Positions 3,180-53,276 of a DNA stretch of 64,000 nt are shown here, piece by piece. The position numbers were made by a program, and so were the translations under genes. The DNA lies in assembly GCF_006345805.1 (NCBI RefSeq), contig NC_043002.1, positions 83,452,001 to 83,516,000 on the forward strand, read 5' to 3'. The number at the start of each line of letters is the position of its first letter. Within the stretch, counting starts at the first letter, position 1. A model generated the notes under the pieces. That model did not search any database, was not told where the DNA came from, and worked only from the letters and a program-made list of their open reading frames with translations. This stretch comes from Octopus sinensis. Lineage: Eukaryota.

Positions 3180-3540
3180 TCATCATCATCATCATCATCA
3201 TCTTTGTTTAGCATCCACTTTCCATGCTAGCATGGGGTGGACGGTTCGACTGGGGTCTGGGAAGCCAGAAGGCTGCACCAGGCCCAGTCTGATCTGGCAA
3301 TGTTTCTACAGCTGGATGCCCTTCCTAACGCCAACCACTCCGTGAGTGTAGTGGGTGCTTTTTACGTGCCACCGGCACAGGTGCCAGACGAGGCTGGCAA
3401 ACGGCCACAATCAGATGGTGCTCTTTACGTGCCACCGGTACGGGGCCAGTCGGGGCAGCGCTGGCAATGGCCACGTTTGGATGGCTCTCTTACGTACCAC
3501 CGGCACTGGTATCACAGCTGCAATTTCCATTGATGTTGAT
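3180..3540 (-). mobile_element. RTE-type 3'-UTR element, family E ((GAT)n tail, about 62-66-bp internal subrepeats)
   Basis: GTGGTTGGCGTTAGGAAGGGCATCCAGCTGTAGAAAC core, 3 subrepeats. Confidence 0.85.
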
Positions 3541-3865
3541 CGATTTCGATTGGCCTATGTCATGAAAATAGCTTCATACCCAATTGCAATGTAGGTTCCT
3601 TTCTTTACATATATAATGGAGTCAACTGTTATCCTGCTGTGCTTTAGGACACCATACTATGTGTGTGTAAGCCGTTTAGAGTGACAGTGCTTCTGAATAA
3701 GTACATTCAGCTGTAAAATAGTGTTAGTAGAGGAGACACAGACTCCATGAGACTCAATGCAAGCAACTTGTTTAGGTGGATAGTAATTTCAAATGAGAAT
3801 TAATAATAGGTAAAGAAATACTCTTCAGTTCACTTGGAAGGGATAATCTCTTTTAGTACAATTAA

Positions 3866-15309: not shown

Positions 15310-15545
15310 TATATATATATATATATACATTTACATACATACATACATACGTACATAGATATTCATGCATCCATATATATATATATATATGTGTATATAA
15401 ATATATATATATGTATATATATGTGCATATAAATATATATATATGTATATATATATGTGTATATAAATACATATATATGTATATATATGTGCATATAAAT
15501 ATATATATATGTATATATATATGTGTATATAAATATATATATGTA
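15310..15545. repeat. TA-derived minisatellite (about 28-30-bp unit)
   Basis: Recurrent GTG(T/C)ATATAAATATATATATATGT units. Confidence 0.85.
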
Positions 15546-15546
15546 T

Positions 15547-15722
15547 CACGTAAAAAACACCCACTATACTCACGGAGTGGTTGGCGTTAGGAAAGGCATC
15601 CAGCCGTAGAAACTCTGCCAGATCAGACTGGGCCTGATGCAGCCTTCTGGTTTCACAGACCCCAGTTGAACCGTCCAACCCATGCTAGCATGGAAAGCGG
15701 ACGCTAAATGATGATGATGATG
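15547..15722 (+). mobile_element. Family E element (5'-truncated)
   Basis: Core plus (GAT)n tail. Confidence 0.85.
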
Positions 15723-15839: not shown

Positions 15840-16050
15840 TTAGCAATTGCCATTTGGTGCATGAGAGAGTTTGATGCAGCTGCCCTCATGCTGTGAAGTT
15901 GGTTCATCTGGGACACCTGACAGGAAGAGATCCGGTTTTATTTTAAAAACATCTGCATCCACCCCATGCAGGTCTCTCAGGTTCTTTGGGAGGATATTGA
16001 AGAGCTGTGGGCCTCTGAAGCCCAGGCTATCACAGTATCTTGTCCTATAT
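15840..16050 (-). mobile_element. CR1/L2-group LINE ORF2 C-terminal fragment
   Basis: Translation [49 protein letters not shown] resembles the post-RT C-terminal tail of CR1-group LINEs (LFN-LP..FK..LD.FL..VPD.P pattern). Confidence 0.7.
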
Positions 16051-16051
16051 A

Positions 16052-16082
<31 letters not shown>

Positions 16083-16139
16083 TAAATTAGAGATAAAACC
16101 ACTATTAGGCAAATCAAACAGTGAAAAACATAAACCAAT

Positions 16140-16360
16140 ACATAGAAATAAAATGATATGTATATATATATATTTGTATATATATATGTATATATATGTA
16201 TATATGTATGTATGTATATATATGTATATATATATGTTATATATATATATATATGTATGTATTATATATATTGTATGTATATATATAGTATGTATTATAT
16301 ATATGTATGTATTATATATATATAATATATATATATATATGTATGTATATATATGTATTG

Positions 16361-16414
<54 letters not shown>

Positions 16415-16434
16415 ATGTATATATATATATAATG

Positions 16435-16469
<35 letters not shown>

Positions 16470-17645
16470 GTATGATATATATATATGTATGTATATATAT
16501 ATGTATATATATGTATATATGTATATATATGTATATATATATATATGTGTATATATATATATTGTATTATATAGGTATATTATATATATATATAGTATAT
16601 ATGTATAATATATATATATGTATATATGTATATATATATATAATATGTATAGATGTATATGTATATTATATATATATGTATATATATATATGTATAGTAT
16701 ATATATGTATATATATATATATGTATATTATATATATATATGTATATACTATATATATGTATATATATATGGTATATATATATGTTATATATATGTATGT
16801 ATATATATATGTAGTAATTATATATATGTATATATATATGTGTATATATATATGTATGATATATATATATGTATATATATATGGTGATGTATTATATATA
16901 TATTGTATGTATATAATATATATGTAGATATGTATGTATATATATATATGAGTATATATGTATATATATATAGTGGATTATATATATGTAGTATATATGT
17001 ATATATATATGTATGTGTTATATATATGTATGTATTTATATATATATATGTATGTATATATATAATATATATGTATATATGTGTATATATGTAATATATG
17101 TATATATATGTATATATGTATATATATGTATTAATATATGTATATAATGTATATATATATATGTATATAATATATGCTATATATATATGTATATATATAT
17201 GTATATATATGTATATATATATGTATATATATATGTATATATATATGTATATATATATGTATATATATGTATATATATATGTGTATATATGTGTATATAT
17301 ATGTATTATGGATATATATATGTGTATATATATGTATAATATGTGTAATATATATGGGTATATTATATTATATATATGTGTATATATATGTAAATATATG
17401 TGTATATATATGTCTATATATATGTGATATATATGTGTTATTATATATATGTGTATATATATGTGTTATATTATATATGTTGTATATATATATGTAATAC
17501 TATATATATAATGTGTATATATATGTATATATATAATATATAATATGTATATATATATATGTGTTACTATATATGTATATTATATATATATGATATATAT
17601 ATATATATGTATATATGTATATATATATGTATATATATATTATAT
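16140..17645. repeat. About 1.5-kb degenerate (TA)n/(TATATG)n low-complexity tract
   Basis: Almost exclusively A/T with scattered G, very few C. Confidence 0.95.
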
Positions 17646-18180
17646 GTAGAAAAATACAAACTGGGACAAGAACATAAAACATTTAGAAGAGATACAAAAA
17701 ACACGGACGGGACATTCGAAGCCTTCGATCTTCAGTCAAGAACCGGATCATCCTCGCAATTTCGGCTGATTAATCTTGAGATCGCTCCAATCCAGCCAGC
17801 CCCAAAGAAAAGCTAAGCTACGAGCATTAGATTTCTTGGAAAAAAGATCGAATGTATACGAAACAAGGTCAGAAAAATGGATGATGCCACACGAATATAA
17901 ATACAAAAAACAATAATAGTAATAACAGGACAAAAACAGTGGGTGTCTTACGACTATAGACAGTACAACTTAGTTTAGCTGGCGTATTTGGAAAAAAATG
18001 CCTTTTTCGGCAGATGAAGACGATGTTCTCGTGGTGCTGGTTAGAAGCCGAAAGGCTGGTTGACCAGCGGTCACGTGAGAGGAGAAGAGAGAGAAAAAAG
18101 AGGGGGCAAAGGAATCAAAGAGAGAGAGAAAAAGAGGGACGAAGGCACCAAAGGGGGGAGAAGAGAGAGAAAGAAGGAAT
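17646..18180. mobile_element. CpG-rich repeat remnant inserted in a (TA)-rich tract, possibly a Penelope-like terminal region
   Basis: Abrupt compositional change, several small hairpins and microsatellite flanks. No diagnostic ORF. Confidence 0.3.
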
Positions 18181-18195
18181 ATGTACATACATATA

Positions 18196-18573
18196 CACTT
18201 GCGTCAGAAATTAATTAGCACTTCTCAAATTTCTACATTAAATAGGTTAAATCAATTAACCTATGAGCTGTTCAAAATGTCTTACGCGATGAGAAAACTT
18301 AGTATGGGTGTGATTTCGGTCCTTGCGAGGCGCTACCTATATCTATTAAACAAAGGAAGATTTGTCTGCATCCGCACTCCAAGTTGTTGCACTGCTATGT
18401 CAACATCATAAGGCTGTAGACTCTCAAACTGCTCTGCAAACAAAGTTACGTCATCGTTCTGCGCAACAGTGAACTCACAACAAAGCAATAGTTCGAGATA
18501 TGGCCACTAGGTGACAGCACATACCTTGAGTGAAGAGCAAATCAAGGGTGCTAATTAATTTCTGACGGTAGTG
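18196..18573. mobile_element. Tc1/mariner-type MITE
   Basis: 26-bp TIRs CACTTGCGTCAGAAATTAATTAGCAC and GTGCTAATTAATTTCTGACGGTAGTG (2 mismatches), with TA on both flanks. Confidence 0.85.
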
Positions 18574-18599
18574 TATATATATGTATATATATATATGTA

Positions 18600-18949
18600 T
18601 GTGCCGGTGACACGTAAAAGCACCATCCATTTCGTGGCAGTTTGCCAGCTCTGTCTGGCCCCCATTTTGGTGGCACGTAAAAGCACCATCCGTTCGTGTC
18701 CGTTGCCAGCCTCGCCTGGCCCCCGTGCCGGTGACACGTAAAAGCACCATCCGTTCGTGGCCGTTTGCCAGCTCTGTCTGGCACCTGTGCGGGTGACACG
18801 TAAAAAGCACCCACTACACTCGCGATCTGACTACACTCCCAGATCTGACTGGGCCTGATGAAGCCTTCCAGCTTCACAGACCCCAGTTGAACCGTCCAAC
18901 CCATGCTAGCATGGAAAACGGATGCTAAATGATGATGATGATGATGATG
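18600..18949 (+). mobile_element. Family E element
   Basis: 4 subrepeats, internal deletion in the core, (GAT)n tail. Confidence 0.85.
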
Positions 18950-19326
18950 ATACATATATACATACATATATATATGGTTGTTATATTTTTTTGATAACAT
19001 AATAGGTTAAATAGGATGATGTCTATATTACAATAACCAATAATGTGTTGTGCATGTATAGTAATATTACGATCATGAAATTAGCATTAGCTTATCTCAC
19101 TCTTTCTTGTGGAACCCCTAGGAACCTTTTGCGGAACCCTAGGGTTCCGGGGAACCTCTGTTGAGTAACGCTGGTTTAATGATTAGCCAGTTCACCATCT
19201 TTGACTAATAACTTATTGATTACAGTGATTCAACGAATGATTGATAACAGACATACTCGCCTTGCTTTACATCGCCTACCCCAAACGTAATTACTTTCAT
19301 GAATCAGTCTAATTTATATTTAGTCT

Positions 19327-19384
19327 TATTTGCAATGTTGTGTTGTCACTCAAACATTTAGGAGTAAATCCTGCATTGCATATA
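19327..19384 (+). ncRNA. Weaker hairpin candidate (HP0)
   Basis: TATTTGCAATGTTGTGTTGTCACTC pairs with GAGTAAATCCTGCATTGCATATA: about 20 bp with 2 G-U, 3 mismatches and 2 bulges, 10-nt loop, poor basal extension. Confidence 0.2.
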
Positions 19385-19892
19385 TGTCATGATACAGTCT
19401 AATCTGGTGTTGTTTAGCTACAACTCAGCTCTGATCCACTAGACCTATGATTTAGGCCTTTCAAACTGTGACCCACCCTATTCCCCCCCCCCCTACATTG
19501 TCTTTCATCCTTTCAGCATCAATAAATAAATAGTCCAGTACTGAGGTCGTATAATTGGCTGTTTCCTTCTCCAGAAAACTCTGGATTTTTGCCCATGATA
19601 AAAATTATTTATTGGTGTTAAGCTTCAGATCAACCTTGATCAAGCAGACCTTTGACTAAAGGCATTCTAGCCATGACAATCCAGTGTTTTTTAATTCTTT
19701 TTTTCTTCTTATATAGGTAGCAAAGACTGCAGTATTTTATGTGGCTTTTATATTAAAATGTTAGTAAGTGATGTAGGAGATTTGGCTGTGATTTCTTGTA
19801 GGTCTTTGTACAGATGTTTCCTCAGTGTTTTTTTTTTTTTTGTGTGTGGATAGATGTTAGAGGTTGAGATTCTAATACTGCAATTTCATTGT

Positions 19893-19999
19893 GGTGTTGT
19901 TATTGACATCTAAGGGTGATACATGCAATTGCAGTGGATAACCCGATTGGTTCATACTGCAACTGCAAAATGTATTACCTGTGGATTTGACATAGCACC
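19893..19999 (+). ncRNA. Pre-miRNA-like long imperfect hairpin (candidate HP1)
   Basis: Hand-folded. GGGTGATACAT (19914-19924) pairs with ATGTATTACCT (19970-19980), and GCAATTGCAGT pairs with ACTGCAACTGC. An outer helix joins GGTGTTGT (19893) with ATAGCACC (19992-19999). Multiple G-U wobbles on the + strand; unique, non-repeat sequence. Confidence 0.45.
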
Positions 20000-21390
20000 T
20001 GTTGATGATGTTGGTATTGATGATGATGATGATGATCTGTCTTTTCTCAACTCTTCTTTCTTTCTTTATTAAAGCTGCAACACTGTGTATCAGCATGCCC
20101 GTTGCACATTTGAAATCTGCTATATGCTTCTCCTCCCCCCCTTCTCTCTCTCTTTCTATCTCTATGTTTACCTCCCTCAGTCTGTCTATCTGTCTCTCTC
20201 TCTCCCCCACAGATTTTAACCCCCCCCCCACATGTTTTTATAAACTATCTTGTATTATATCAGTCACTCTTCTCTGTTGCCTTTTGTCTCACAAAATACC
20301 TCATTTGACATCAGAATCTGTCATTTATAATTATTTTTTTGTTTAACATGAGTATATCCTAACAAATACTTATTTGTTTCCCAAAACGCACACATACACA
20401 CACACATTTATACATTCATTTCTAATTTATTGTTGCCTTCCTGAATGTTTTAGTAATTCTCATTCCACTCCACCACCACTTCCTTATTAATTTTAATACC
20501 TTTCCCTTCATAGTAACAGTGTTATTTTCTACATTATTATATATAGCTTTTTTTTTTCTTTTTTAAAATCAGATATTTACTCTGTCTGTCTGTCTGTCTC
20601 TCTCTCTGTCATTGTTAAGTCTCCAGTTCTCCAGTCAGCTTTGATCCCGATGATCCCTGATCAGAGAAATGTTCTACTTGTGACCGACCACTCTGTCTTT
20701 TTGTATAGCGATGACTTTGTCCAACCCCATGTACTCTTTATTTAAGGTAGTGAATGGATTGTGGTTTGCTCAATAATAGGCTCACACACAAACACAAACT
20801 GAGACAGACCTATACATACATACATGCATACATACATACACAACCATGTGTAAGATATCAATTGTTCAATAACAGTCACCTATCTAATATTAACACACTT
20901 CTCCCATAGTGTTTTTACACCAGCCCAAACCCCCTACTTTTTTCTCTTTTTGGTTAATATTTATTGCTCATCTAAACTGTAATGACCTCTAATGAGAGTA
21001 GTAGCAAGCTGACTAGTAGATACTACTTTTTTCTTTCTTTCTTTCCTTTTTTTTTTAACACCTATCATTGTTCTTTCTCCATCTATATATACAAAGGGAG
21101 TTGGCAAAGATCAGATAGTTTCACTATTGCAGCTACCGTTTTCCTTGAAACACACAATTCTTATGGTTTGATGTTCTTCATAATAGCCCCTTCTACCATC
21201 TTTTTTTTTTTTGCCTTCTTCCAGAAAAGAGGTGTTGAGTGCTAGTGCATTTTTCCTGCTCACTCTTTTTTTTTTTTTATTCCTTTCTATCATTGAAGAT
21301 ATTGATTGGAACTTAAAAGAACCTGCTCAGTATTTCCTAAACACATTTTAGCAGATGTTTATAGACAAAAAAGTCCTTATTTTTATCTTA

Positions 21391-21428
<38 letters not shown>

Positions 21429-21706
21429 ATATTACCTATGTTATATATATATATTAGCTATGTATATATATATATATATTACCTGTGTTATATATATATA
21501 TATACCTATATATCTATCTATCTATGTATGTACTATGTATGTATGTATATGTGTGTGTGTGTGTATATTACCTATGTTATATATATATATACCTATATAT
21601 CTATCTATCTATGTATGTACTATGTATGTATGTATGTTTAGTGCTGACAGTTGGAAAAAGTACACTCAATTCCATGGTAGAGATTAATCATATTATTTTG
21701 GTTGAG

Positions 21707-21785
21707 TCAGTTTCTTGCTACTTTGAGTTTCATCTGTGGCTGCACAGAGTGTCTTCAGGTAAAACTCAGAGTAGCAAGTGACTGA
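21707..21785 (+). ncRNA. Pre-miRNA-like hairpin (candidate HP2)
   Basis: Arms 21707-21736 and 21756-21785 give 25 Watson-Crick pairs, 3 G-U and 2 mismatches over 30 positions, with a 19-nt loop. A basal extension pairs TTGGT with ACCAA. Confidence 0.6.
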
Positions 21786-21881
21786 ACCAATATATGTATG
21801 TATGTATATGTGTGTGTGTGTGTGCGCGCGCTGATGTACACAGGAAAAATAGAACTTGAAATATGAGTAAATGTATATTTT

Positions 21882-21984
21882 TATTAGTATTTAGCTGAAG
21901 CAACAGACTGACTCAAGGCTGACAGTTTTTATGTATTGACTCTCAGCCCTTGAGTCACCCTGTTGCTCCTGCTCAGTATTAATA
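21882..21984 (+). ncRNA. Pre-miRNA-like hairpin (candidate HP3)
   Basis: Arms 21882-21926 and 21939-21984 give 37 Watson-Crick pairs, 2 G-U, 6 mismatches and one 1-nt bulge. The 12-nt loop TTTTATGTATTG contains UGU. It lies about 100 nt downstream of HP2. Confidence 0.55.
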
Positions 21985-21989
21985 TATAT

Positions 21990-22360
21990 GTGCAGAAGTG
22001 CCTATGTGATAAGAAGCTTGCTTCCCAACCACATGGTTCTGGGTTCAGTCCCACTGCGTGGCACCTTGGGCAAGTGTCTTCTACTATAGCCTTGGGCGTG
22101 TATTTGGTAGACAGACATTGAAAGAAGCCCGTCGTATAATATATATGTATGTATTTGTGTGTCTCTGTTTGTGCCCCCACCATCGCTTCACAACCGATGT
22201 TGGTGTGTTTACTTCCCCATAACTTAGCAGTTTGGCAAAAGGGAGTGATAGAGTAAGTACTGGGCTTACAAAGAATAGGTCCAGGGGTTGATTTGTTCGA
22301 CAGAAGGCGATAACCCACCATGGATGCAGTCAAATGGCTGAAACAAGTAAAAGAATAAAG
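21990..22360 (+). mobile_element. tRNA-derived SINE, family A
   Basis: Near full-length copy. Confidence 0.9.
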
Positions 22361-22557
22361 AATATATATATACATATAAATACATGTATGTGTGTGTGTG
22401 TGTAGATATACATACATACATAAATATATATATATATATGCACACGTGTGAGTCGCCTTAGAGAGCATAAGTCAGGGAAAAGATGCACTCATATGTCTGT
22501 CTGTAGAGTGGGCACGATATTTAATACTATACGTTTCAGATGATATATATATATATA

Positions 22558-22925
22558 TTTTTTACTTGTTTCAGTCATTTGACTGCGGCCATGCTGGTGC
22601 ACCGCCTTTAATCGAGCAACTCGACCCCAGAACTTATTCTTTGCAAGCCCAGTACTTATTCTATTGGTCTCTTTTGCCGAACCGCTAAGTAACGGGGACA
22701 TAAACACACCAGCATCAGTTGTCAAGCAATGCTAGGGGGACAAACACAGACACACAAACACATATATATATATATATGCATATATACGACGGGCTTCTTT
22801 CAGTTTCCGTCTACCAAATCCACTCACAAGTCTTTGGTCGACACTTGCCCAAGGTGCCACGCAGTGGGACTGAACCTGGAACCATGTGGTTGGTAAGCAA
22901 GCTACTTACCACACAGCCACTCCTG
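22558..22925 (-). mobile_element. tRNA-derived SINE, family A
   Basis: Near full-length reverse copy with a small internal deletion. Confidence 0.9.
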
Positions 22926-24299: not shown

Positions 24300-26000
24300 T
24301 AATATACTGAGTTTCTCACGGCATTATTTATGATCATTAGTGTGTGTATAGAAGTGGTTCTTTTTTTTTTTTTTCTATTATTCTTCATACCACTTCCTGA
24401 ATAGTCAGACTGTTTGCACTTAGAAGTTATTTTGTTGGCCACTATAAACTACTAGCGGCCACTACTTAGTCTCAAAGCAACAACCTCGCAAGCAACTTCA
24501 ACACCATACTTAGGCCACAGCGCTTTAAAAACAAAACAAACAAACAAACAAAAAAATTGTCGCTGGCTTTCTTGTTCATTGCAATGAATCTATATTTTCA
24601 CCTATCAGTAATCCCTGGATAATCCTTAACCCGTGGATGTTTTAGCCATGCCAAAATATCGCATCAGCAATTCAACTCGTAACCACAGTCTTTCTTCTTA
24701 TTGTATCGTAGATGGCAGTGGTGGCGGCAACAGCAGTAATGAACAGCTCCCACAGTGGAAAACATACTGTAAGTAGAAAAAGTGTTTAAATTTAAATTGC
24801 ATCTCCGTTCATCATATAAACACGTCTTTTTTTTCCCCCTCTGTTACGATTCACTTCTTTAACTTTCTTTGTATCTTCGCTGTTTTTGAATTTTAGCATG
24901 AAAAAAAAATACGTATTTGTAATTGTTTATTACATCAAGTAAACAGATAAATTCATTTTTATTATGTTTCCTGATGAAGGATCTTTTAATTTATAAAAGT
25001 ATTTCGTTAGGATGAAAATTATTGGTTTTTTTTCATTCTTTATAAAATGTATATTTTGTTTTCCTTGATTCTTGTTTCTGAAAGGAAAAGCTGTGAGTGC
25101 GTGTGTATGTGTATTCCTGTATATTATGATCGTTGTGTGAGAGAGAGAAAGAGAGAGTGTATGTTCCACTGTATTGTGAAAGTGTTGTGTTTTCTGATTG
25201 TGTATATGTGTATATATGAACTTCTGTATTGTTTCTGATTGTATGTGTGTTAGTAATTGTTAGTAATCTGCCTACGAGTAACAAGTCACAAAATAAAAAT
25301 TAAAAAAAAGCAAAACAAATCTTTAACAGCCGCTTTTTATCAGTTTATTGAAATCCTTTGTTGTTGTTTTTTGTTTAGCCCTGGGTATTCTTATCAAGCG
25401 AACTTATAATCGCTGGGTTTCCAGCCGTGACAATCTCGTTCTTCTGTATGTAAAGAACTACTCACGACCACACTTTTTAAAGCAGTAGCATGTGAAAAAA
25501 GATTTTGCTGCTATGTCTAGCTAATTGAGTGGCCACCGCGTACCTCTCGTTTGGCGTGTGAAACCCATTGTGTGTATGTATATGTGTATTTCAAATGTAC
25601 CCCAGTTTATGATTTTTCTTTTGAGCGTGCTAAAAGATATTACCAAGTAGAGGATTTTGAGTACATATATAGTGTGGAATTTTTCCCGAACATGAACTTT
25701 CAGGTTATTTTATTGACAGTTATTTACATACTTTTGTGCGTGAGAACGTGTATAAAAAATAATGAATGGATCCTCCATTGATTTTCGACGGGTATTGTGA
25801 CTGTTCAATCAACGAAACTCATTGAATTATGGTTATGAATGGTAGAGTATCCCACAGGTAACGTAATCCTCTGGTAAAATCCAATCTGACATACATTGTG
25901 TAACGAGGTCTAGGCTGGCTCTTTGAATTAAAAATAAAGCCCAGTCAATTTTGGCGGTTGTGTTGTTGACGATTTATCACGGCTGACTAGACATTCATCT
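24300..26000 (+). promoter_or_regulatory. CpG-retaining zone around the candidate exon (possible promoter or 5' region)
   Basis: Rough by-eye counts: about 14-18 CG per 600 bp here versus about 2-5 in unique sequence at 4.8, 37.8 and 40.2 kb. Confidence 0.35.
24648..24768 (+). CDS. Candidate first coding exon of an unidentified host gene (MPKYRISNSTRNHSLSSYCIVDGSGGGNSSNEQLPQWKTY, phase-1 donor)
   Basis: GCCATG start context, 40 open codons plus 1 nt, then a GTAAGT donor at 24769. A possible upstream acceptor (TATTTTCACCTATCAG) ends at 24608. An overlapping frame from ATG 24712 (MAVVAATAVMNSSHSGKHT, phase 0) uses the same donor. The region is unique and CpG-retaining. No homology recognised and no downstream exon identified. 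Confidence 0.4.
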
Positions 26001-26420: not shown

Positions 26421-27089
26421 AAACACTAGTCGTTTTTGCCAGCTGAGTGGATTGAAGCAACGTGAAATAAAGTGTCTTGCTCAATGACACAACACGCCAC
26501 CAGGAATCGAACGCACTGCCTTACGATCATGAGCCGAATATCCAAACCACGAAGTCACGCCTTCACAGGCACTGGCATGCACATGCGAAATATACACATG
26601 GTGATTATTGAATGAGTGAGGGAGAAAGAGAAAGTCATTACAGTTTATTAATTGAACACGACTGATAAACACCTCATACCCAGAGAAATATGCTCGCGCA
26701 CATAAGCAGAGAGAGAAGGAGCGAAAGAAAGAAAGAACCATTAAAACATCTCATGTTAAATAAGTCAACTTTGAACCAGCAATGCCAATACAACTCATAC
26801 CCTCAGTTTGGACAGAAGACCCATAAACCTCATGTCTTGTGATGAGATCTCACTCTGTGCATGGAAAAATGTGTATATAAACACACACACACACATATAT
26901 ATGATACCTGTGCTGGTGGCATGTAAAAAGCACCATCTGAACGTGGCTGATGGCAGTAATCCCTCACCATATCGTGGTTCACCTATTGTGGTTTTTTATT
27001 TAAGCTTACCCTGATTCCTCTGTGGTGGTGTTTTGCATTTATAATAAAATAAATGTATACAAATTATAAAAATAATTTAAAAAAATATA

Positions 27090-27468
27090 CCAGTGCCCGT
27101 GGCATATAAGAGGTCCATCCGAACATGGCCGTAGCCAGTACCGCATCGACTGGCCTCCGTGCTGGTGGCATGTAACAAACACCATCCGATCGTGGCCGTT
27201 GCCAGCCTCGCCTGGCCTCCGTGCCGGTGGCACGTAAAAAGCACCATCCGAGCGTGGCCATTCGCCAGCCTCGTCTGGCACCTGTGTCAGTGGCACATAA
27301 AAAGCACCCATTACACTCACGGAGTGGTTGGCGTTAGGAAGGGCATCCAGCTGTAGAAACACTGCCAGATCTGACTGGCCTGGTGCAGCCTTCGGGCTTC
27401 CCAAACCCCAGTTGAACCGTCCAACCCATGCTAGTATGGAAAGCGGACGTTAAATGATGATGATGATG
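27090..27468 (+). mobile_element. Family E element
   Basis: 4 subrepeats plus core plus (GAT)n tail. Confidence 0.85.
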
Positions 27469-38650: not shown

Positions 38651-41344
38651 AACATGCACGAGTACACACAGGAAGATATTCTTTTCACCGTGAGGCATGA
38701 GGTATCATTCCATTCCAACTCTAAAATTATCATTAGACATTAGAGAACATCATGGCGGAAATATATTAAAAATTCTTAGTGTCTTCTACTACAGCCCGAG
38801 GCTATAGAAGACATTTGCCTGAGGTTCCACACACACATACACACGCTCTCACACAAACACACACACACACACACACACACAAAGAGACCTATATGTAAGT
38901 ATAATACATAAAATAAGTACTCAAGGGTGAAACACATCATGGCATTTCCCCAATAATAAAAGAATAGCATATTTCATTAAAAATATCATTACAACAAAGG
39001 TCAAGAAGTAGAATCCAGTTTGGCAAACTACGTTTACTCTACATTTTCTACATTTATTCACTTACAATTCTATATTTCTGAGATGAGGAAGTTATATGTA
39101 TTGGATACTATTTTCATTGGCTTTCAGTACGTTTTTGGCTGTTGTATGATCCAGCACCACACACCTGAAAAAAGGCAGGTGTGTACAACAGCCGAAATAT
39201 AGTGAAAGCAACAATCAAGGTGAAGGTACCAGTCTGGATAATGTAGATAGTGTACACAATTTATCACTTGATCCTAAATTTCTAATTATAGCAACAGGTG
39301 ACTATCACCACCTCAGACATGACTTAACATATTTTACTCATATCTGAATATGATTTTCTTATTTATTTACTTCTAGATGGTTAGTAGTTGTTGGGAGCTG
39401 AAATATAATCTAAAATGAAATTTTTTAAAAATGAACATTTGCCATTCTAAATCCATTACTATATTGATTAGTAAAACTTCAAGTTGGTTATGTTGAATAA
39501 TGTTTTGTTTATTAACTCTTTGAACTTGAGTATGCCTTGGAAGACATGATTTCATTTGATTGTACATACTCTTGGAAGATGTAAGAGCAGGTTGCAGCTT
39601 GGGTTTGTGTTCACTACTCACTAATTGGCAGAAACATCATTATCTTCAGCTGTAAACACAAAGCCCTGCAACTAACGTCTTTTGTGACTTCCAGGAGTAC
39701 AGTTAAATGAAATTGTGTCTGCTAAAGTGTGCTTGCAATTTCAAAAGGTGAAACATTTATTTTGGTATATTGCAGTAGATTTTCCAAAACAGTAGGAAGA
39801 TAAACTATAGGTGTTCCTATATTATGTTTTATTGCGGATTCAAATCATGATTGGGTTTTTTTATTTTTCATTTCTTTTATATTTCTAAAAAATAATTTTG
39901 TTTCCAGCTGTATATACATTAGGGTGGAGTCGGTTGGGTATACATCTTCTCTTACAAATATTGACTTTGTATCTAAGTGAGGAATATGTATTTTTGTAAT
40001 TTGTTGAGTCTGAGATAAAGTTAAAAACCAATCCTCCTCACATCCACTGACAAATGCTTTTTGGTACTCTTAATTTCATGACCTTCAACTGACCCATGTT
40101 TCTTAGCTTATTTGTTGAAATACCCTACCTTTGTTTCAAGTCATTTTGAAAATAATTAAAAATTTATTACAATAAATTTGTCATTATTAACCTGGTGTTG
40201 GAATATAAATTAACATGAAATTCTGAGAGATGGTTTTAATTGAGATCATTTTAAAACAAGGAATTTGTGTCAGAGCCAATTATAGTTTCAGACAGGTCAG
40301 TATCAAGAGTTAAGTGAAAGATGTACCACTACCTTAACTCAGCTGTTTCTATTTTTTTCTCTTCTTCTTTCAAGAACGTTTTGTTAGCTATTCAAGTACT
40401 ACTTGTTTGGAGAATGTGTTTTCACTATTTTGTTATTAGTTTCAAATATTTCTTCCTCTCCCTAAGATACTTATTCAAAGTAGTTATCATGTTATGAAGA
40501 CACTTTTACCACTTCAATACTTGTTGTTCTTCACTTCACAAGCTCACTGTAGTTGTGAGCATGACTTACTTTCTTAACATTGCAAGCATTTCAATTTAGT
40601 TGAGTGGCTACTTCTTTGCCTCTTGCAAAAGGTAGCAAATTGGTGGAGTTTGAGTAGCCGATAGAATGCCTTGTGGTATTTGTTCCATTTCACTGTGCTC
40701 TATTTTCAGTTCTTGTCAAAAGCCAACTTTTCCTTTCATCCTTTCAGAGTTGACAAAATGTATTAAAAATCCAGATCAGTAGATTGACTGAGCTGCAAGA
40801 CTGTTAGATGGATACTATGTAGTGTTTGTTCTGACTCATTGCATTCTGAGTTCAAATCCTGCCATGGCCTACTTATGTTGTAGACTGAACCCATTGTGTG
40901 GGTTAAAACCATTACCTGGTATCTTGGCTGCTTTAACAGAGTCCACTCTGTTGCAAGCAATCAGGTCAAGTCTAAGTTTAAGAATACTTTCAACAGAAAC
41001 ATTAATCCCTGTAAAGGGTCATGGGTACCGCCTTTCCATTTGACCAAAAAGACAGACAAAAAAATAAAAGATATCAATAAAATGTGCTAGTGCTACATAA
41101 AAGGCATCCAGTTGTAGAAACCATACCAAAGCAGGCAATAGAGCTCAGCATAGACTTCTGGCTTGCCAGCTCCTGTCAAACTGTCCAACCCATGCCATCA
41201 TGGAAAGCAGATATTAAGTAATGATAATGATGACATTGATGATGTACTGAGTTAAAAAAGACGGACCGACTTGATGATAAACATTCACCTTTACTTACAA
41301 TTACACAGTAACTGAAACTGCTAGTCTGCCACACTTGCGAATTA

Positions 41345-41515: not shown

Positions 41516-41724
41516 TACTTTATAATTAGGGTTCAGCAAAGATTTGCTTTACCACATACCGAAGTTTAGAAATAGCAACCAAAAAACCTTAGCTATTTCT
41601 TCTACTTTAAAAAGGGACTCCCAGAAAAACTTTTTAAAGTAGAAGAAATAGCTAAGGTTTTTTGGCTGCTATTTCTAAACTTCGGTATGTGGTAAAGCAA
41701 ATCTTTGCTGAACCTAATTATAAA

Positions 41725-43842: not shown

Positions 43843-44360
43843 ATCATCATCATCATCATCGTTTAACGTCCGCTTTCCATGCTTGTGTGGGTTGGACAAT
43901 TTTGACTAAGGGCTGGCGAACCAGATGGCTGCACCAGGCTCCAATCTTGATTTGGCAGTGTTTCTACAGCTTGATGCCCTTCCTAACGCCAACCACTCTG
44001 AGAGTGTAGTGGGTGCTTTTTACGTGCCACCGGCACGGGGCCAATCAGGCGGTACTGGCAACAACCTCGCTCAAATCCTTTTACACATTCCACCAGCACC
44101 GGTGCCAGTGAGGCAACTTTGGTAACGATCACACTCGAATGGTGCCCTTTTACATGCCACTGGCACGGAAGCCAGTTGGCTGCTCTGGCAACGATCATGC
44201 TCGGATGGTGCTCTTGGCACCCTACTAGCATGGGCACAAGTGCCAGTAAGGCGACGCTGGTAACGATCACACTCGAATGCTGCACTTTAAGTGCCACTGG
44301 CACGGAAGCCAGTTAGCCGCTCTGTGAATGATCATGCTCGTATGGTGCTCTTTGCACCCT
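43843..44360 (-). mobile_element. Family E element
   Basis: About 6 subrepeats plus core plus (CAT)n on the + strand. Confidence 0.85.
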
Positions 44361-52167: not shown

Positions 52168-52560
52168 ATTCATCATCATCATCATCGTTTAACGTCCGTT
52201 TTCCGCGCTAGCATGGGTTGGACGGTTCGACTGGGGCTGCACTAGGCTCCAGTCTGATCTGGCAGTGTTTCTACAGCTGGATGCCATTCCTAACGCCAAC
52301 CACTCCGCGAGTGTAGTGGGTGCTTTTTACGTGCCACCGGCACAGTTGCCAGGGGAGTCTGGCATCGACCCCGATCGGTTGGTGCTTTTAATGTGCCACT
52401 GGCACGGAAGCCAGTCAAGGCGGCACTGGCATCGGCCACGTTCGGATGGTGCCTTTTACGTTCCACCGGCACGGAAGCCAGTCGAGGCGGCGCTGGCATT
52501 GACCACGTTCGGATGGTGCTTTTTATGTGCCACCGGGACAGGTATCACAACTACTCTTTC
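52168..52560 (-). mobile_element. Family E element
   Basis: 4 subrepeats plus core plus (CAT)n. Confidence 0.85.
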
Positions 52561-53276
52561 CATTGACATTTATTTCAGTGTGGAAAATGATGATGATAAT
52601 ATATATCATTATTGTAGTGTCCACCTTCTCTATACTGAAGAAACTTGTCAAGACAGATTTTTTTTTAGCTGGATGCTCTTCCAGCAGCCTACCTTCTGTT
52701 TCCAATGAACAGCTCAGTGACTGGCAACTTTTCGTAGCAGATTGCAAATACATTGTTCATGTGGATGGTGATCTTGTTTCAATCTCAAGACGAAAGGTAC
52801 ACACAAGCTCATATACATGCCACCCCACCCATACACATCACACAATGAGCTTTGTTAGAATCTCCATCTAAGAATGCTTCTCCCAATACATTGGTCAGCC
52901 TGAGGCCATAGTAGAAGACACCAGCCCAAGTGCATGGAGTTGGAACAAACTACATATTTTTAGTGAATTCCTTAACCATACAAACATATTTGTGCTTACC
53001 ATTATTGCTTTTAATATCCACTTTCCTATGCTTGCATGGGCTGGGTGGAATTTTTGAGGCAGATGTTGTACAGCCAGATACCATTCCTGTCACCGCCCTT
53101 GCTTGTTTTCAAGCCTAGATATGTTGTCACAGAGTATTGGAAATGAATGGCATTCATTTACAATGTGATATCAAGATAAAGAAGCACAAACATATATGCA
53201 TTCACATACATACATACATACATGCACTCACATGTGTGTGTGTGTGTGTGTGTACATATATATATATATATATATA

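What the first reader, a model, noticed from the sequence alone, without database searches (positions are those of the whole stretch)
19327..21984. Candidate lineage-specific microRNA cluster: 3-4 long stem-loops in 2.7 kb of unique sequence
Seen: three long hairpins (19893-19999, 21707-21785, 21882-21984) and a weaker one (19327-19384) sit in non-repeat DNA, and I found nothing comparable elsewhere in the unique sequence by manual scanning. In HP0, HP1 and HP2 most departures from perfect symmetry are G-U pairs on the + strand (they would be A-C mismatches on the - strand), which suggests selection on an RNA structure. Known: coleoid cephalopods have a large expansion of novel miRNA families, often clustered or intronic. 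None of the arms matches a conserved bilaterian or mollusc miRNA that I can recall. Inference: a polycistronic pri-miRNA, possibly in a 5'-UTR intron of the gene whose candidate exon is at 24.6 kb on the same strand.
Basis: partly seen in the sequence, partly recalled or inferred. Interest (0 to 1): 0.8.

Follow-up and report, generated by a model that had tools for sequence, protein, structure and literature searches.

The report
Three clustered hairpins, miRNA status unproven
Three strong stem-loops really do sit within 2.1 kb of single-copy non-coding DNA, but they look more like decaying local inverted duplications than a proven microRNA cluster; only one (HP1) has the geometry of a canonical microRNA precursor.

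Summary
The three long hairpins are real. On the + strand HP0 (19893-19999) folds at -44.0 kcal/mol (z -5.9), HP1 (21707-21785) at -42.3 (z -8.0) and HP2 (21882-21984) at -48.6 (z -9.5). The fourth (19327-19384) is at chance level (z -1.75).

They are single-copy within the 64 kb and rank among the best non-microsatellite hairpins in it. They are not unique, though: a ~200-bp near-perfect palindrome lies at 41521-41724.

All three also fold well on the - strand, so they are inverted repeats at the DNA level, with arms 80-84% identical. The + strand G·U excess is 17:4 when counted on the MFE structures. It falls to 10:4 (not significant) in a structure-blind arm alignment.

HP1 and HP2 share an 18-21-nt motif in both direct and inverted orientation. 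That points to serial local inverted copying, not tandem duplication of a whole hairpin.

No Rfam family matches. The candidate exon has no protein homologue. The literature says novel octopus miRNA families never co-occur on a scaffold.

Small-RNA reads, cross-species conservation and genome copy number could not be tested with these tools.

Most likely these are neutral local inverted duplications. HP1 is a plausible young or proto-miRNA.

The parts
19893..19999 (+). HP0: long imperfect inverted repeat / stem-loop. It has 43 pairs in isolation and extends to about 59 pairs (19873-20018) when folded in context.
   Evidence: + strand -44.0 kcal/mol (z -5.86), - strand -32.1 (z -4.19); 8 G·U pairs on +; stem extension in context; single copy in the window.
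21699..21789 (+). HP1: stem-loop with an 11-rung lower stem (5 bp, a G·G mismatch, 5 bp), a 4-nt bulge (GUUU, 21710-21713), a 23-rung upper stem (17 bp, a C·A mismatch, 5 bp) and a ~19-nt apical region. This is the best pri-miRNA look-alike of the three.
   Evidence: -42.3 kcal/mol (z -7.96) on +, -33.8 (z -6.29) on -; structure. UG at 21699-21700 at the basal junction and UGUG at 21735-21738 at the apical junction lie 36 nt apart. No CNNC downstream.
21713..21734 (+). Predicted HP1-5p product, UCUUGCUACUUUGAGUUUCAUC. This is inferred from the basal-UG and apical-UGU register and is not observed.
   Evidence: Inference from the structure and the published Drosha geometry (35-bp stem, apical loop of 10 nt or more), as summarised in PMC10710096.
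21759..21780 (+). Predicted HP1-3p product, GUAAAACUCAGAGUAGCAAGUG. Inferred by assuming a 2-nt 3' overhang; not observed.
   Evidence: Inference from the pairing.
21882..21984 (.). HP2: long inverted repeat. The arms extend to 21872-21918 / 21948-21994, giving 47 pairs. It folds equally well on both strands.
   Evidence: + strand -48.6 kcal/mol (z -9.48), - strand -49.7 (z -8.48); repeat I4, 47-nt arms, 77% complementary..
21702..21722 (+). Shared motif, copy 1 (TTGAGTCAGTTTCTTGCTACT), in the HP1 5' arm.
   Evidence: D3 (direct repeat with 21950-21970, 76%) and I3 (inverted with 21899-21916, 89%); 0 of 300 shuffles reach the HP1/HP2(-) alignment score.
21899..21916 (-). Shared motif, inverted copy (AGCAACAGACTGACTCAA), in the HP2 5' arm.
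   Evidence: I3.
21950..21970 (+). Shared motif, direct copy (TTGAGTCACCCTGTTGCTCCT), in the HP2 3' arm.
   Evidence: D3.
19327..19384 (.). It is not distinguishable from chance.
   Evidence: z -1.75 on + and -1.74 on -; 15 and 9 of 200 shuffles fold as well.
21378..21640 (.). (TA)n/(TG)n/(TATG)n microsatellite block immediately upstream of HP1. A second block at 21790-21842 separates HP1 from HP2.
   Evidence: 31-nt identity between 21534-21564 and 21793-21823; D1, D2.
21992..22371 (+). It forms an inverted pair with a second copy at 22543-22925.
   Evidence: 10 or more copies in the window at 72-81% identity; alignment of the 5' ends.

Best explanation
HP0, HP1 and HP2 are moderately old local inverted duplications, that is, imperfect palindromes with arms 80-84% identical. 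They lie in non-coding DNA flanked by repeats. They most likely arose by replication template switching or fold-back copying in a microsatellite-rich stretch, and HP1 and HP2 partly copied from one another. They have since decayed roughly neutrally.

If the + strand is transcribed, each would fold into a 35-60-bp dsRNA hairpin. Such a hairpin is a generic substrate for ADAR editing and, incidentally, for Drosha and Dicer. They are not a conserved polycistronic miRNA cluster. HP1 alone has the geometry that would let it act as a young, lineage-specific (proto-)miRNA.

Shown: the hairpins exist, both strands fold, the arm identities, the shared motif, and the sequence context. Inferred: the template-switch origin, neutrality, transcription, and any processing.
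For: - Both strands fold far better than shuffles, so the symmetry is a property of the DNA.
- Arm identity is 80-84%, with transversions and indels as well as transitions: 10 G·U-type, 4 A·C-type, 10 transversions and 17 gap columns. This is a neutral-looking spectrum compared with the SINE control (236 transitions, 100 transversions; + strand 128:108).
- HP1 and HP2 share an 18-21-nt motif in inverted (89%) and direct (76%) orientation, placed 'inside-out' relative to the two loops. 0 of 300 shuffles reach the score. This fits serial inverted copying, not tandem hairpin duplication.
- Microsatellites flank HP1 on both sides, and a SINE starts just beyond HP2.
- The same window holds a much younger ~200-bp near-perfect palindrome. 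So such structures arise in this genome without any link to miRNAs.
- HP0 and HP2 stems (43-59 pairs) exceed the ~35-bp Drosha optimum.
- No Rfam family matches.
- Novel octopus miRNA families never co-occur on a scaffold (PMC9699675).
- In primates, more than 6,000 template-switch hairpins yielded only 18 or more miRNA genes (PMC10710096), so the prior that any one such hairpin is a miRNA is well under 1%.
Against: - Three of the best 4-6 hairpins in 64 kb lie within 2.0 kb (post-hoc P 0.01-0.12).
- HP1 and HP2 are spaced about 190 nt apart, as in real miRNA clusters.
- HP0 and HP1 fold 8-12 kcal/mol better on the + strand.
- The MFE-based G·U excess of 17:4 exceeds the SINE-derived neutral expectation (P about 0.01).
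- HP1 has an 11 + 23-rung stem, a basal UG, an apical UGUG in register and a ~19-nt apical loop.
- Template-switch origin cannot be shown without an outgroup sequence.
- The curated miRNA set admits it misses species-specific miRNAs younger than about 50 My.
Confidence: 0.55

Rival explanations
1. At least one hairpin, most likely HP1, is a genuine young, lineage-specific miRNA processed by Drosha and Dicer from a + strand transcript. In the strong version, HP1 and HP2 (with or without HP0) form a polycistronic pri-miRNA.
For: - HP1 geometry: 11-rung lower stem, 23-rung upper stem, ~19-nt apical region, UG at the basal junction and UGUG at the apical junction 36 nt apart.
- z-scores of -6 to -9.5.
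- Better folding on the + strand for HP0 and HP1, and an MFE-based G·U excess of 17:4.
- HP1-HP2 spacing of about 190 nt, and clustering with P about 0.01-0.1.
- Single copy in the window.
- The window-wide G+T excess on the + strand and A>G over T>C in SINEs (41:25) are compatible with + strand transcription.
- Species-specific miRNAs are acknowledged to be missing from the curated set.
Against: - No expression or conservation data are available.
- No Rfam match.
- Curated novel octopus families are never co-located.
- HP2 shows no strand preference.
- HP0 and HP2 stems are too long for canonical Drosha measuring.
- HP1 has no CNNC.
- The G·U bias vanishes in the structure-blind alignment.
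- MFEI values of 1.2 are higher than is typical of animal pre-miRNAs and resemble raw inverted repeats.
- The proposed host exon is unsupported.
- The base rate for such hairpins being miRNAs is well under 1%.
Confidence: 0.2
2. The hairpins are relics of short palindromic transposons (MITE or foldback elements, like the Made1 element that gave rise to mir-548 in primates). They are present in many diverged copies across the genome.
For: - Each unit is essentially two terminal inverted repeats with a short loop.
- HP2 is bounded by TA dinucleotides at 21880-21881 and 21985-21986 and sits in AT-rich DNA.
- The window is about 24% in-window repeats and rich in SINEs.
- The ~200-bp palindrome at 41521-41724 could be an intact foldback element.
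- The motif shared by HP1 and HP2 could be a family signature.
Against: - There is no second copy of any hairpin in the 64 kb, and no similarity to the 41.5-kb palindrome. This test has almost no power below about 40,000 genomic copies.
- A TA 'target-site duplication' is trivial in AT-rich sequence.
- The HP1/HP2 shared motif is inside-out relative to the loops, which is not expected for two copies of one element.
Confidence: 0.15
3. The hairpins are hpRNA-type endogenous siRNA precursors, or selected ADAR-recruiting dsRNA elements, in a + strand transcript.
For: - Stems of 43-59 pairs (HP0, HP2) are closer to hpRNA or ADAR substrates than to pri-miRNAs.
- Octopus A-to-I editing is concentrated in introns and 3' UTRs where hairpins are abundant (PMC9699675).
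- An inverted SINE pair next door (21993-22371 / 22543-22925, 81% identical) would add about 380 bp of dsRNA.
Against: - There is no transcript, editing or small-RNA evidence.
- Nothing distinguishes selected from incidental dsRNA.
- Known hpRNAs have much longer stems.
Confidence: 0.07

Closest known systems
Template-switch-mutation (TSM) hairpins and the de novo miRNAs derived from them (Monttinen, Frilander & Loytynoja 2023, PMC10710096; PMC8794818)
   Same: These are short local inverted copies that create whole stem-loops in unique, often intronic DNA. Most are neutral and a small minority become miRNAs. Here, neighbouring hairpins share an inverted 18-nt motif.
   Different: Template-switch origin is normally inferred from an ancestral or outgroup sequence, which is not available here. 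These arms have already diverged by 16-20%.
Canonical animal miRNA precursors and the novel coleoid/octopus miRNA families (Zolotarov et al. 2022, PMC9699675; MirGeneDB criteria)
   Same: HP1 has a ~35-rung stem, an apical loop of 10 nt or more, and basal UG and apical UGUG motifs in register. All three hairpins have 16 or more complementary arm positions.
   Different: There is no read evidence, no conservation evidence and no family match. HP0 and HP2 stems are too long. Curated novel octopus families are not clustered. HP2 has no strand preference.
MITE-derived miRNA hairpins (for example Made1 / mir-548 in primates; from my own knowledge)
   Same: They are palindromic units of about 80-120 nt made almost entirely of two inverted arms. 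A possible TA flank exists at HP2.
   Different: No multi-copy evidence was found in the window. Genome-wide copy number is untested.
ADAR dsRNA substrates formed by inverted repeats in introns and UTRs
   Same: The duplexes are 35-60 bp and would form on a transcript. They sit next to an inverted SINE pair.
   Different: Typical hyper-edited substrates are inverted copies of dispersed repeats hundreds of bp long. These are short, single-copy, self-contained hairpins.

Membership tests
Animal miRNA gene (MirGeneDB-type criteria) | Hairpin with at least 16 complementary nucleotides between the two arms | tested here: met
   HP0 has 43 pairs, HP1 38 and HP2 47; z -5.9 to -9.5.
Animal miRNA gene (MirGeneDB-type criteria) | Drosha-substrate geometry: ~35-bp stem (about 11 lower plus 22 upper), apical loop of 10 nt or more, single-stranded flanks | tested here: inconclusive
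   HP1 fits: 11 + 23 rungs and a ~19-nt apical region. HP0 (43-59 pairs) and HP2 (47 pairs) are too long. The HP1 lower stem can extend through A-U pairs in some contexts.
Animal miRNA gene (MirGeneDB-type criteria) | Reads of 20-26 nt from both arms, homogeneous 5' ends, 2-nt 3' overhangs | not testable with these tools
   No small-RNA data are reachable. The relevant data sets are GSE192550 / PRJNA791920.
Animal miRNA gene (MirGeneDB-type criteria) | Presence of the hairpin in a second species (the criterion used for novel octopus families) | not testable with these tools
   No cephalopod DNA is in the searchable collections. Protein-anchored routes failed.
Animal miRNA gene (MirGeneDB-type criteria) | Processing motifs: basal UG, apical UGU/GUG, downstream CNNC | tested here: inconclusive
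   HP1 has UG (21699-21700) and UGUG (21735-21738) in register but no CNNC at +16 to +18. HP0 and HP2 have no motifs in register.
Known miRNA or other RNA family (Rfam 15) | Covariance-model score at or above the gathering threshold | tested here: not met
   There are 0 hits at gathering score in the whole window. The best sub-threshold hit on a hairpin is mir-761 at 31 bits against a threshold of 82, on the - strand.
Polycistronic miRNA cluster | Two or more miRNA hairpins on one strand of one primary transcript | not testable with these tools
   The proximity is real (HP1 and HP2 about 190 nt centre to centre; HP0 1.8 kb upstream). Transcription and strand are not shown, and HP2 has no strand preference. 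The literature reports no co-located novel families in octopus.
Mirtron | Hairpin ends coincide with a GU 5' splice site and an AG 3' splice site | tested here: not met
   Read directly from the sequence: none of the three hairpin bases starts with a GURAGU-like donor and ends with a YAG acceptor.
MITE / foldback transposon | Multiple dispersed copies with terminal inverted repeats and target-site duplications | tested here: inconclusive
   Terminal-inverted-repeat-like arms are present. No second copy exists in the 64 kb, but the power of that test is negligible. The TA flanks at HP2 are uninformative in AT-rich DNA. Genome copy number is not testable.
Template-switch-generated hairpin | One arm is an inverted copy of adjacent sequence and is absent from the ancestral or outgroup state | not testable with these tools
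   The inverted-copy relationships are present within and between HP1 and HP2. No outgroup is available.

The most novel reading that the evidence does not exclude
HP1 and HP2 (possibly with HP0) are a species- or genus-specific polycistronic miRNA cluster born by serial template-switch copying next to microsatellites. HP1-5p and HP2-3p would carry the same UGAGUCA-type core. This would be a cluster of novel octopus miRNAs caught early in its evolution, and the first counter-example to the reported non-clustering of novel octopus families.
Probability: 0.07. Interest if true: 0.6.

Novelty: new member of a known kind. Interest (0 to 1): 0.22.

Why it matters
If small-RNA data showed processing, this locus would illustrate how new miRNA genes, and even clusters, arise by local inverted copying in a lineage known for a large miRNA expansion. 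It would also add clustered novel miRNAs where none have been reported. As the evidence stands, it is an ordinary example of inverted-repeat hairpins in repeat-rich non-coding DNA. Its main use is as a caution that strong z-scores and apparent G·U bias do not identify miRNAs.

Tried and rejected
1. Rfam, at gathering score on the whole window and at E<=10 on 19.0-22.5 kb. The only hits were microsatellite-driven sub-threshold matches (mir-297, mir-1277) plus weak generic hairpin hits.

2. Supplements of Zolotarov et al. 2022, searched for the hairpin arms. They hold no miRNA sequences and there was no match. Full-text string searches for arm 14-mers gave nothing relevant. A string search for the SINE core gave nothing, so the organism is not confirmed by any tool.

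3. Host-gene route. The 40-aa candidate exon (24650-24769) shares no words with any protein in the collection.

4. Orthologue retrieval through ORFs that overlap the hairpins. The exact look-ups were not on record. A composite six-frame query returned no hit with E<=1. A query of SINE and GC-rich-repeat anchor ORFs returned no hit. That last query contained low-complexity runs, which probably saturated the 8,000-candidate list, so this negative is weak.

5. Exact-pattern scans for the HP2 and HP1 arms in metagenome and prokaryote genome collections found nothing. A SINE-core control also found nothing. Those collections therefore hold no DNA of this organism, and the negatives are uninformative.

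A manual screen of non-repeat ORFs of 65 aa or more found nothing that looks coding.

7. tRNA scan: none found.

8. Rejected: the mirtron reading (no splice-site ends), and the idea that the three hairpins are paralogous whole-hairpin duplicates. Only an 18-21-nt motif is shared by HP1 and HP2, and the similarity of HP0 to HP1 is marginal (8 of 300 shuffles).
Full report
**What is in the sequence**

Reading 19200-22100 and folding the four stated intervals confirms three strong stem-loops.
- HP0 (19893-19999): -44.0 kcal/mol on the + strand, z -5.86.
- HP1 (21707-21785): -42.3, z -7.96.
- HP2 (21882-21984): -48.6, z -9.48.

In each case none of 200 dinucleotide-preserving shuffles folds as well. 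The fourth, 'weaker' hairpin (19327-19384) is at chance level: z -1.75, and 15 of 200 shuffles fold as well.

All three strong hairpins also fold far better than shuffles on the - strand: -32.1, -33.8 and -49.7 kcal/mol, with z -4.2, -6.3 and -8.5. They are therefore inverted repeats at the DNA level (arms of 35 and 47 nt, 80% and 77% complementary). The hairpins survive folding in 231-nt and 360-nt context. There the stems lengthen, to about 59 pairs for HP0 and 47 for HP2; HP1 has 38-47 pairs depending on context.

**Is it more than chance, and is it unique in the window?**

I ran a census of all 100-nt windows on both strands, keeping unbranched stem-loops of 24 or more pairs that pass a complexity filter. 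It gave 451 loci with a median energy of -20 kcal/mol.
- HP2 and HP1 rank 2nd and 3rd by energy.
- HP0 ranks 6th by MFEI. The ranks between are taken by microsatellite-based hairpins.
- Rank 1 is a near-perfect palindrome at 41574-41670. On inspection it is about 200 bp long (41521-41724, z about -17).
- A further hairpin lies at 39120-39205 (z -5.8).

So 'nothing comparable elsewhere' is nearly right but not fully. Three of the top 4-6 hairpins falling within 2.0 kb has a post-hoc probability of 0.01-0.12, depending on how many hairpins and how much eligible sequence are assumed.

Within the window the hairpins are single-copy and lie in sequence that has no in-window repeat. However, 64 kb of a multi-gigabase genome (genome size from my own knowledge) gives no power against a repeat family with fewer than tens of thousands of copies.

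**Context**

- Upstream, at 18.5-19.0 kb, lies a GC-rich dispersed repeat. Its translated copies recur at 3.2, 15.3, 27.0 and 52.3 kb.
- 19.0-21.38 kb has no in-window repeat.
- 21378-21640 and 21790-21842 are TA/TG/TATG microsatellites that bracket HP1.
A second, inverted copy lies at 22543-22925.
- The candidate first exon at 24650-24769 (ATG ... gtaagt) has no homologue in the protein collection.
- No non-repeat ORF in the window looks coding.
- Rfam finds no family at gathering score in the whole window. Below threshold there are only microsatellite or generic-hairpin matches.

**The G·U argument**

On the MFE structures the + strand has 8, 4 and 5 G·U pairs in HP0, HP1 and HP2. The - strand has 1, 1 and 2. 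That is 17:4.

As a neutral yardstick I aligned 14 SINE copies from the window and polarised their substitutions onto the + strand.
- Transitions that would create G·U on the + strand (A>G plus C>T) number 128.
- Transitions of the opposite type number 108.
- Transitions to transversions are 236:100.
- A>G exceeds T>C by 41:25 (P 0.06), a mild asymmetry.

That asymmetry fits the window-wide G+T excess on the + strand. It could reflect + strand transcription; the link between transcription and such asymmetry is from my own knowledge of mammalian genomes and is not tested here.

Against this yardstick, 17:4 gives P about 0.01. But MFE folding itself prefers G·U pairs and hides mismatches in loops. 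A structure-blind alignment of each 5' arm with the reverse complement of its 3' arm gives 10 G·U-type differences, 4 A·C-type, 10 transversions and 17 gap columns. The 10:4 split gives P about 0.15, and the share of G·U-type changes among all substitutions equals the neutral expectation. The strand bias is therefore suggestive for HP0 and HP1, absent for HP2, and not decisive.

**Relationship between the hairpins**

HP1 and HP2 are not whole-hairpin paralogues, but they do share a motif.
- TTGAGTCAGTTTCTTGCT (21702-21719, HP1 5' arm) is 89% complementary to 21899-21916 (HP2 5' arm).
- The slightly longer 21702-21722 is 76% identical to 21950-21970 (HP2 3' arm).
- 0 of 300 shuffles reach the alignment score.

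The motif runs toward the loop in HP1 and away from the loop in HP2. This 'inside-out' layout fits successive local inverted-copy events and does not fit tandem duplication of a miRNA hairpin. The similarity of HP0 to HP1 is marginal (8 of 300 shuffles).

Arm identities of 80-84% are in the same range as the divergence of the SINE copies. The hairpins could therefore be decaying neutrally and still fold well.

**miRNA-likeness**

HP1 is a good pri-miRNA look-alike.
- Five pairs, a G·G mismatch and five pairs form an 11-rung lower stem.
- A 4-nt bulge follows.
- Seventeen pairs, a C·A mismatch and five pairs form a 23-rung upper stem.
- The apical region is about 19 nt.
- UG sits at the basal junction (21699-21700) and UGUG at the apical junction (21735-21738), 36 nt apart.
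- There is no CNNC downstream.

This matches the preferred 35-bp stem and loop of 10 nt or more (as summarised in PMC10710096). HP0 and HP2 are too long and have no motifs in register. MFEI values near 1.2 are those of raw inverted repeats.

**Priors from the literature**

Zolotarov et al. (PMC9699675) annotated 164 O. vulgaris miRNA genes. The authors also say that species-specific miRNAs younger than about 50 My are missed. The same paper notes that hairpins are abundant in introns and 3' UTRs, where most editing occurs.

In primates, more than 6,000 template-switch hairpins yielded at least 18 miRNA genes (PMC10710096). With about 4-6 comparable hairpins per 64 kb here, the base rate for any one of them being a miRNA is far below 1%. 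The clustering, the HP1 geometry and the partial strand bias raise this, but not to a majority.

**What could not be tested**

No cephalopod genome, small-RNA data set or MirGeneDB sequence is reachable.
- Arm patterns and a SINE control are all absent from the metagenome and prokaryote genome collections, so those negatives carry no information.
- Protein-anchored routes to orthologous DNA failed. The last of these was probably compromised by low-complexity segments in my query.
- The source organism is not confirmed by any tool.

**Verdict**

The miRNA-cluster interpretation can be neither confirmed nor refuted here, but the indirect evidence leans against it. My estimates:
- Neutral local inverted duplications, with HP1 as a possible proto-miRNA: about 0.55.
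- At least one genuine young miRNA: about 0.2.
- MITE relics: about 0.15.
- Selected hpRNA or ADAR elements: about 0.07.

Interest is low to moderate.

Noticed in passing
window 41521-41724: A ~200-bp near-perfect palindrome with ~95-nt arms, 1-2 mismatches and a ~15-nt spacer. It folds at -72 to -76 kcal/mol (z about -17) and lies directly upstream of a (TA)n run. It is a very young inverted duplication or an intact foldback/MITE-like element. It has no similarity to HP0, HP1 or HP2.
   Followed up: partly
window 21993-22371 (+) and 22543-22925 (-): Two SINE copies in inverted orientation, about 170 nt apart and 81% identical over 388 nt. If transcribed they would form a long dsRNA, a typical ADAR substrate, right next to HP2.
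   Followed up: no
window 39120-39205: Another single-copy hairpin (+ strand -33.2 kcal/mol, z -5.8) with a 13-nt asymmetric bulge. It shows that such hairpins are not confined to the 19-22 kb region.
   Followed up: partly
whole window (2-kb bins); SINE copies listed: G>C and T>A on the + strand in most bins; cumulative GC skew rises to 1.16. In SINE copies A>G exceeds T>C by 41:25. This is compatible with the + strand being the sense strand of a long transcription unit, but that is not shown.
   Followed up: partly
window 24650-24769 (+): A 40-codon ORF starts at an ATG and ends at a consensus-like donor (CTG|gtaagt). No protein in the collection shares even three 5-residue words with it.
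   Followed up: yes
window 16100-17700: About 1.6 kb of TA/TG-rich microsatellite (GC 0.17 in the 16-18 kb bin). Similar blocks lie at 15.3-15.55, 23.8-24.1 and 42.2-42.6 kb.
   Followed up: no
window 3230-3600, 15330-15680, 18480-19000, 27040-27450, 43980-44310, 52190-52710: A GC-rich dispersed repeat family whose translations share 'LQLDA(L/F)[17 protein letters not shown]...' and which has internal ~70-nt subrepeats. It forms many of the GC-rich 'hairpins' in the census. One copy ends about 0.9 kb upstream of HP0.
   Followed up: no
window 15840-16112 (-): An ORF ending '...[40 protein letters not shown]...'. By eye it resembles the C-terminal tail of a LINE reverse-transcriptase ORF. Not tested against any library.
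   Followed up: no
window 20140-20215 (+): A long CT-rich polypyrimidine tract ends in '...ctctcccccacag|A', which looks like a 3' splice acceptor. It lies between HP0 and HP1. It may be incidental.
   Followed up: no
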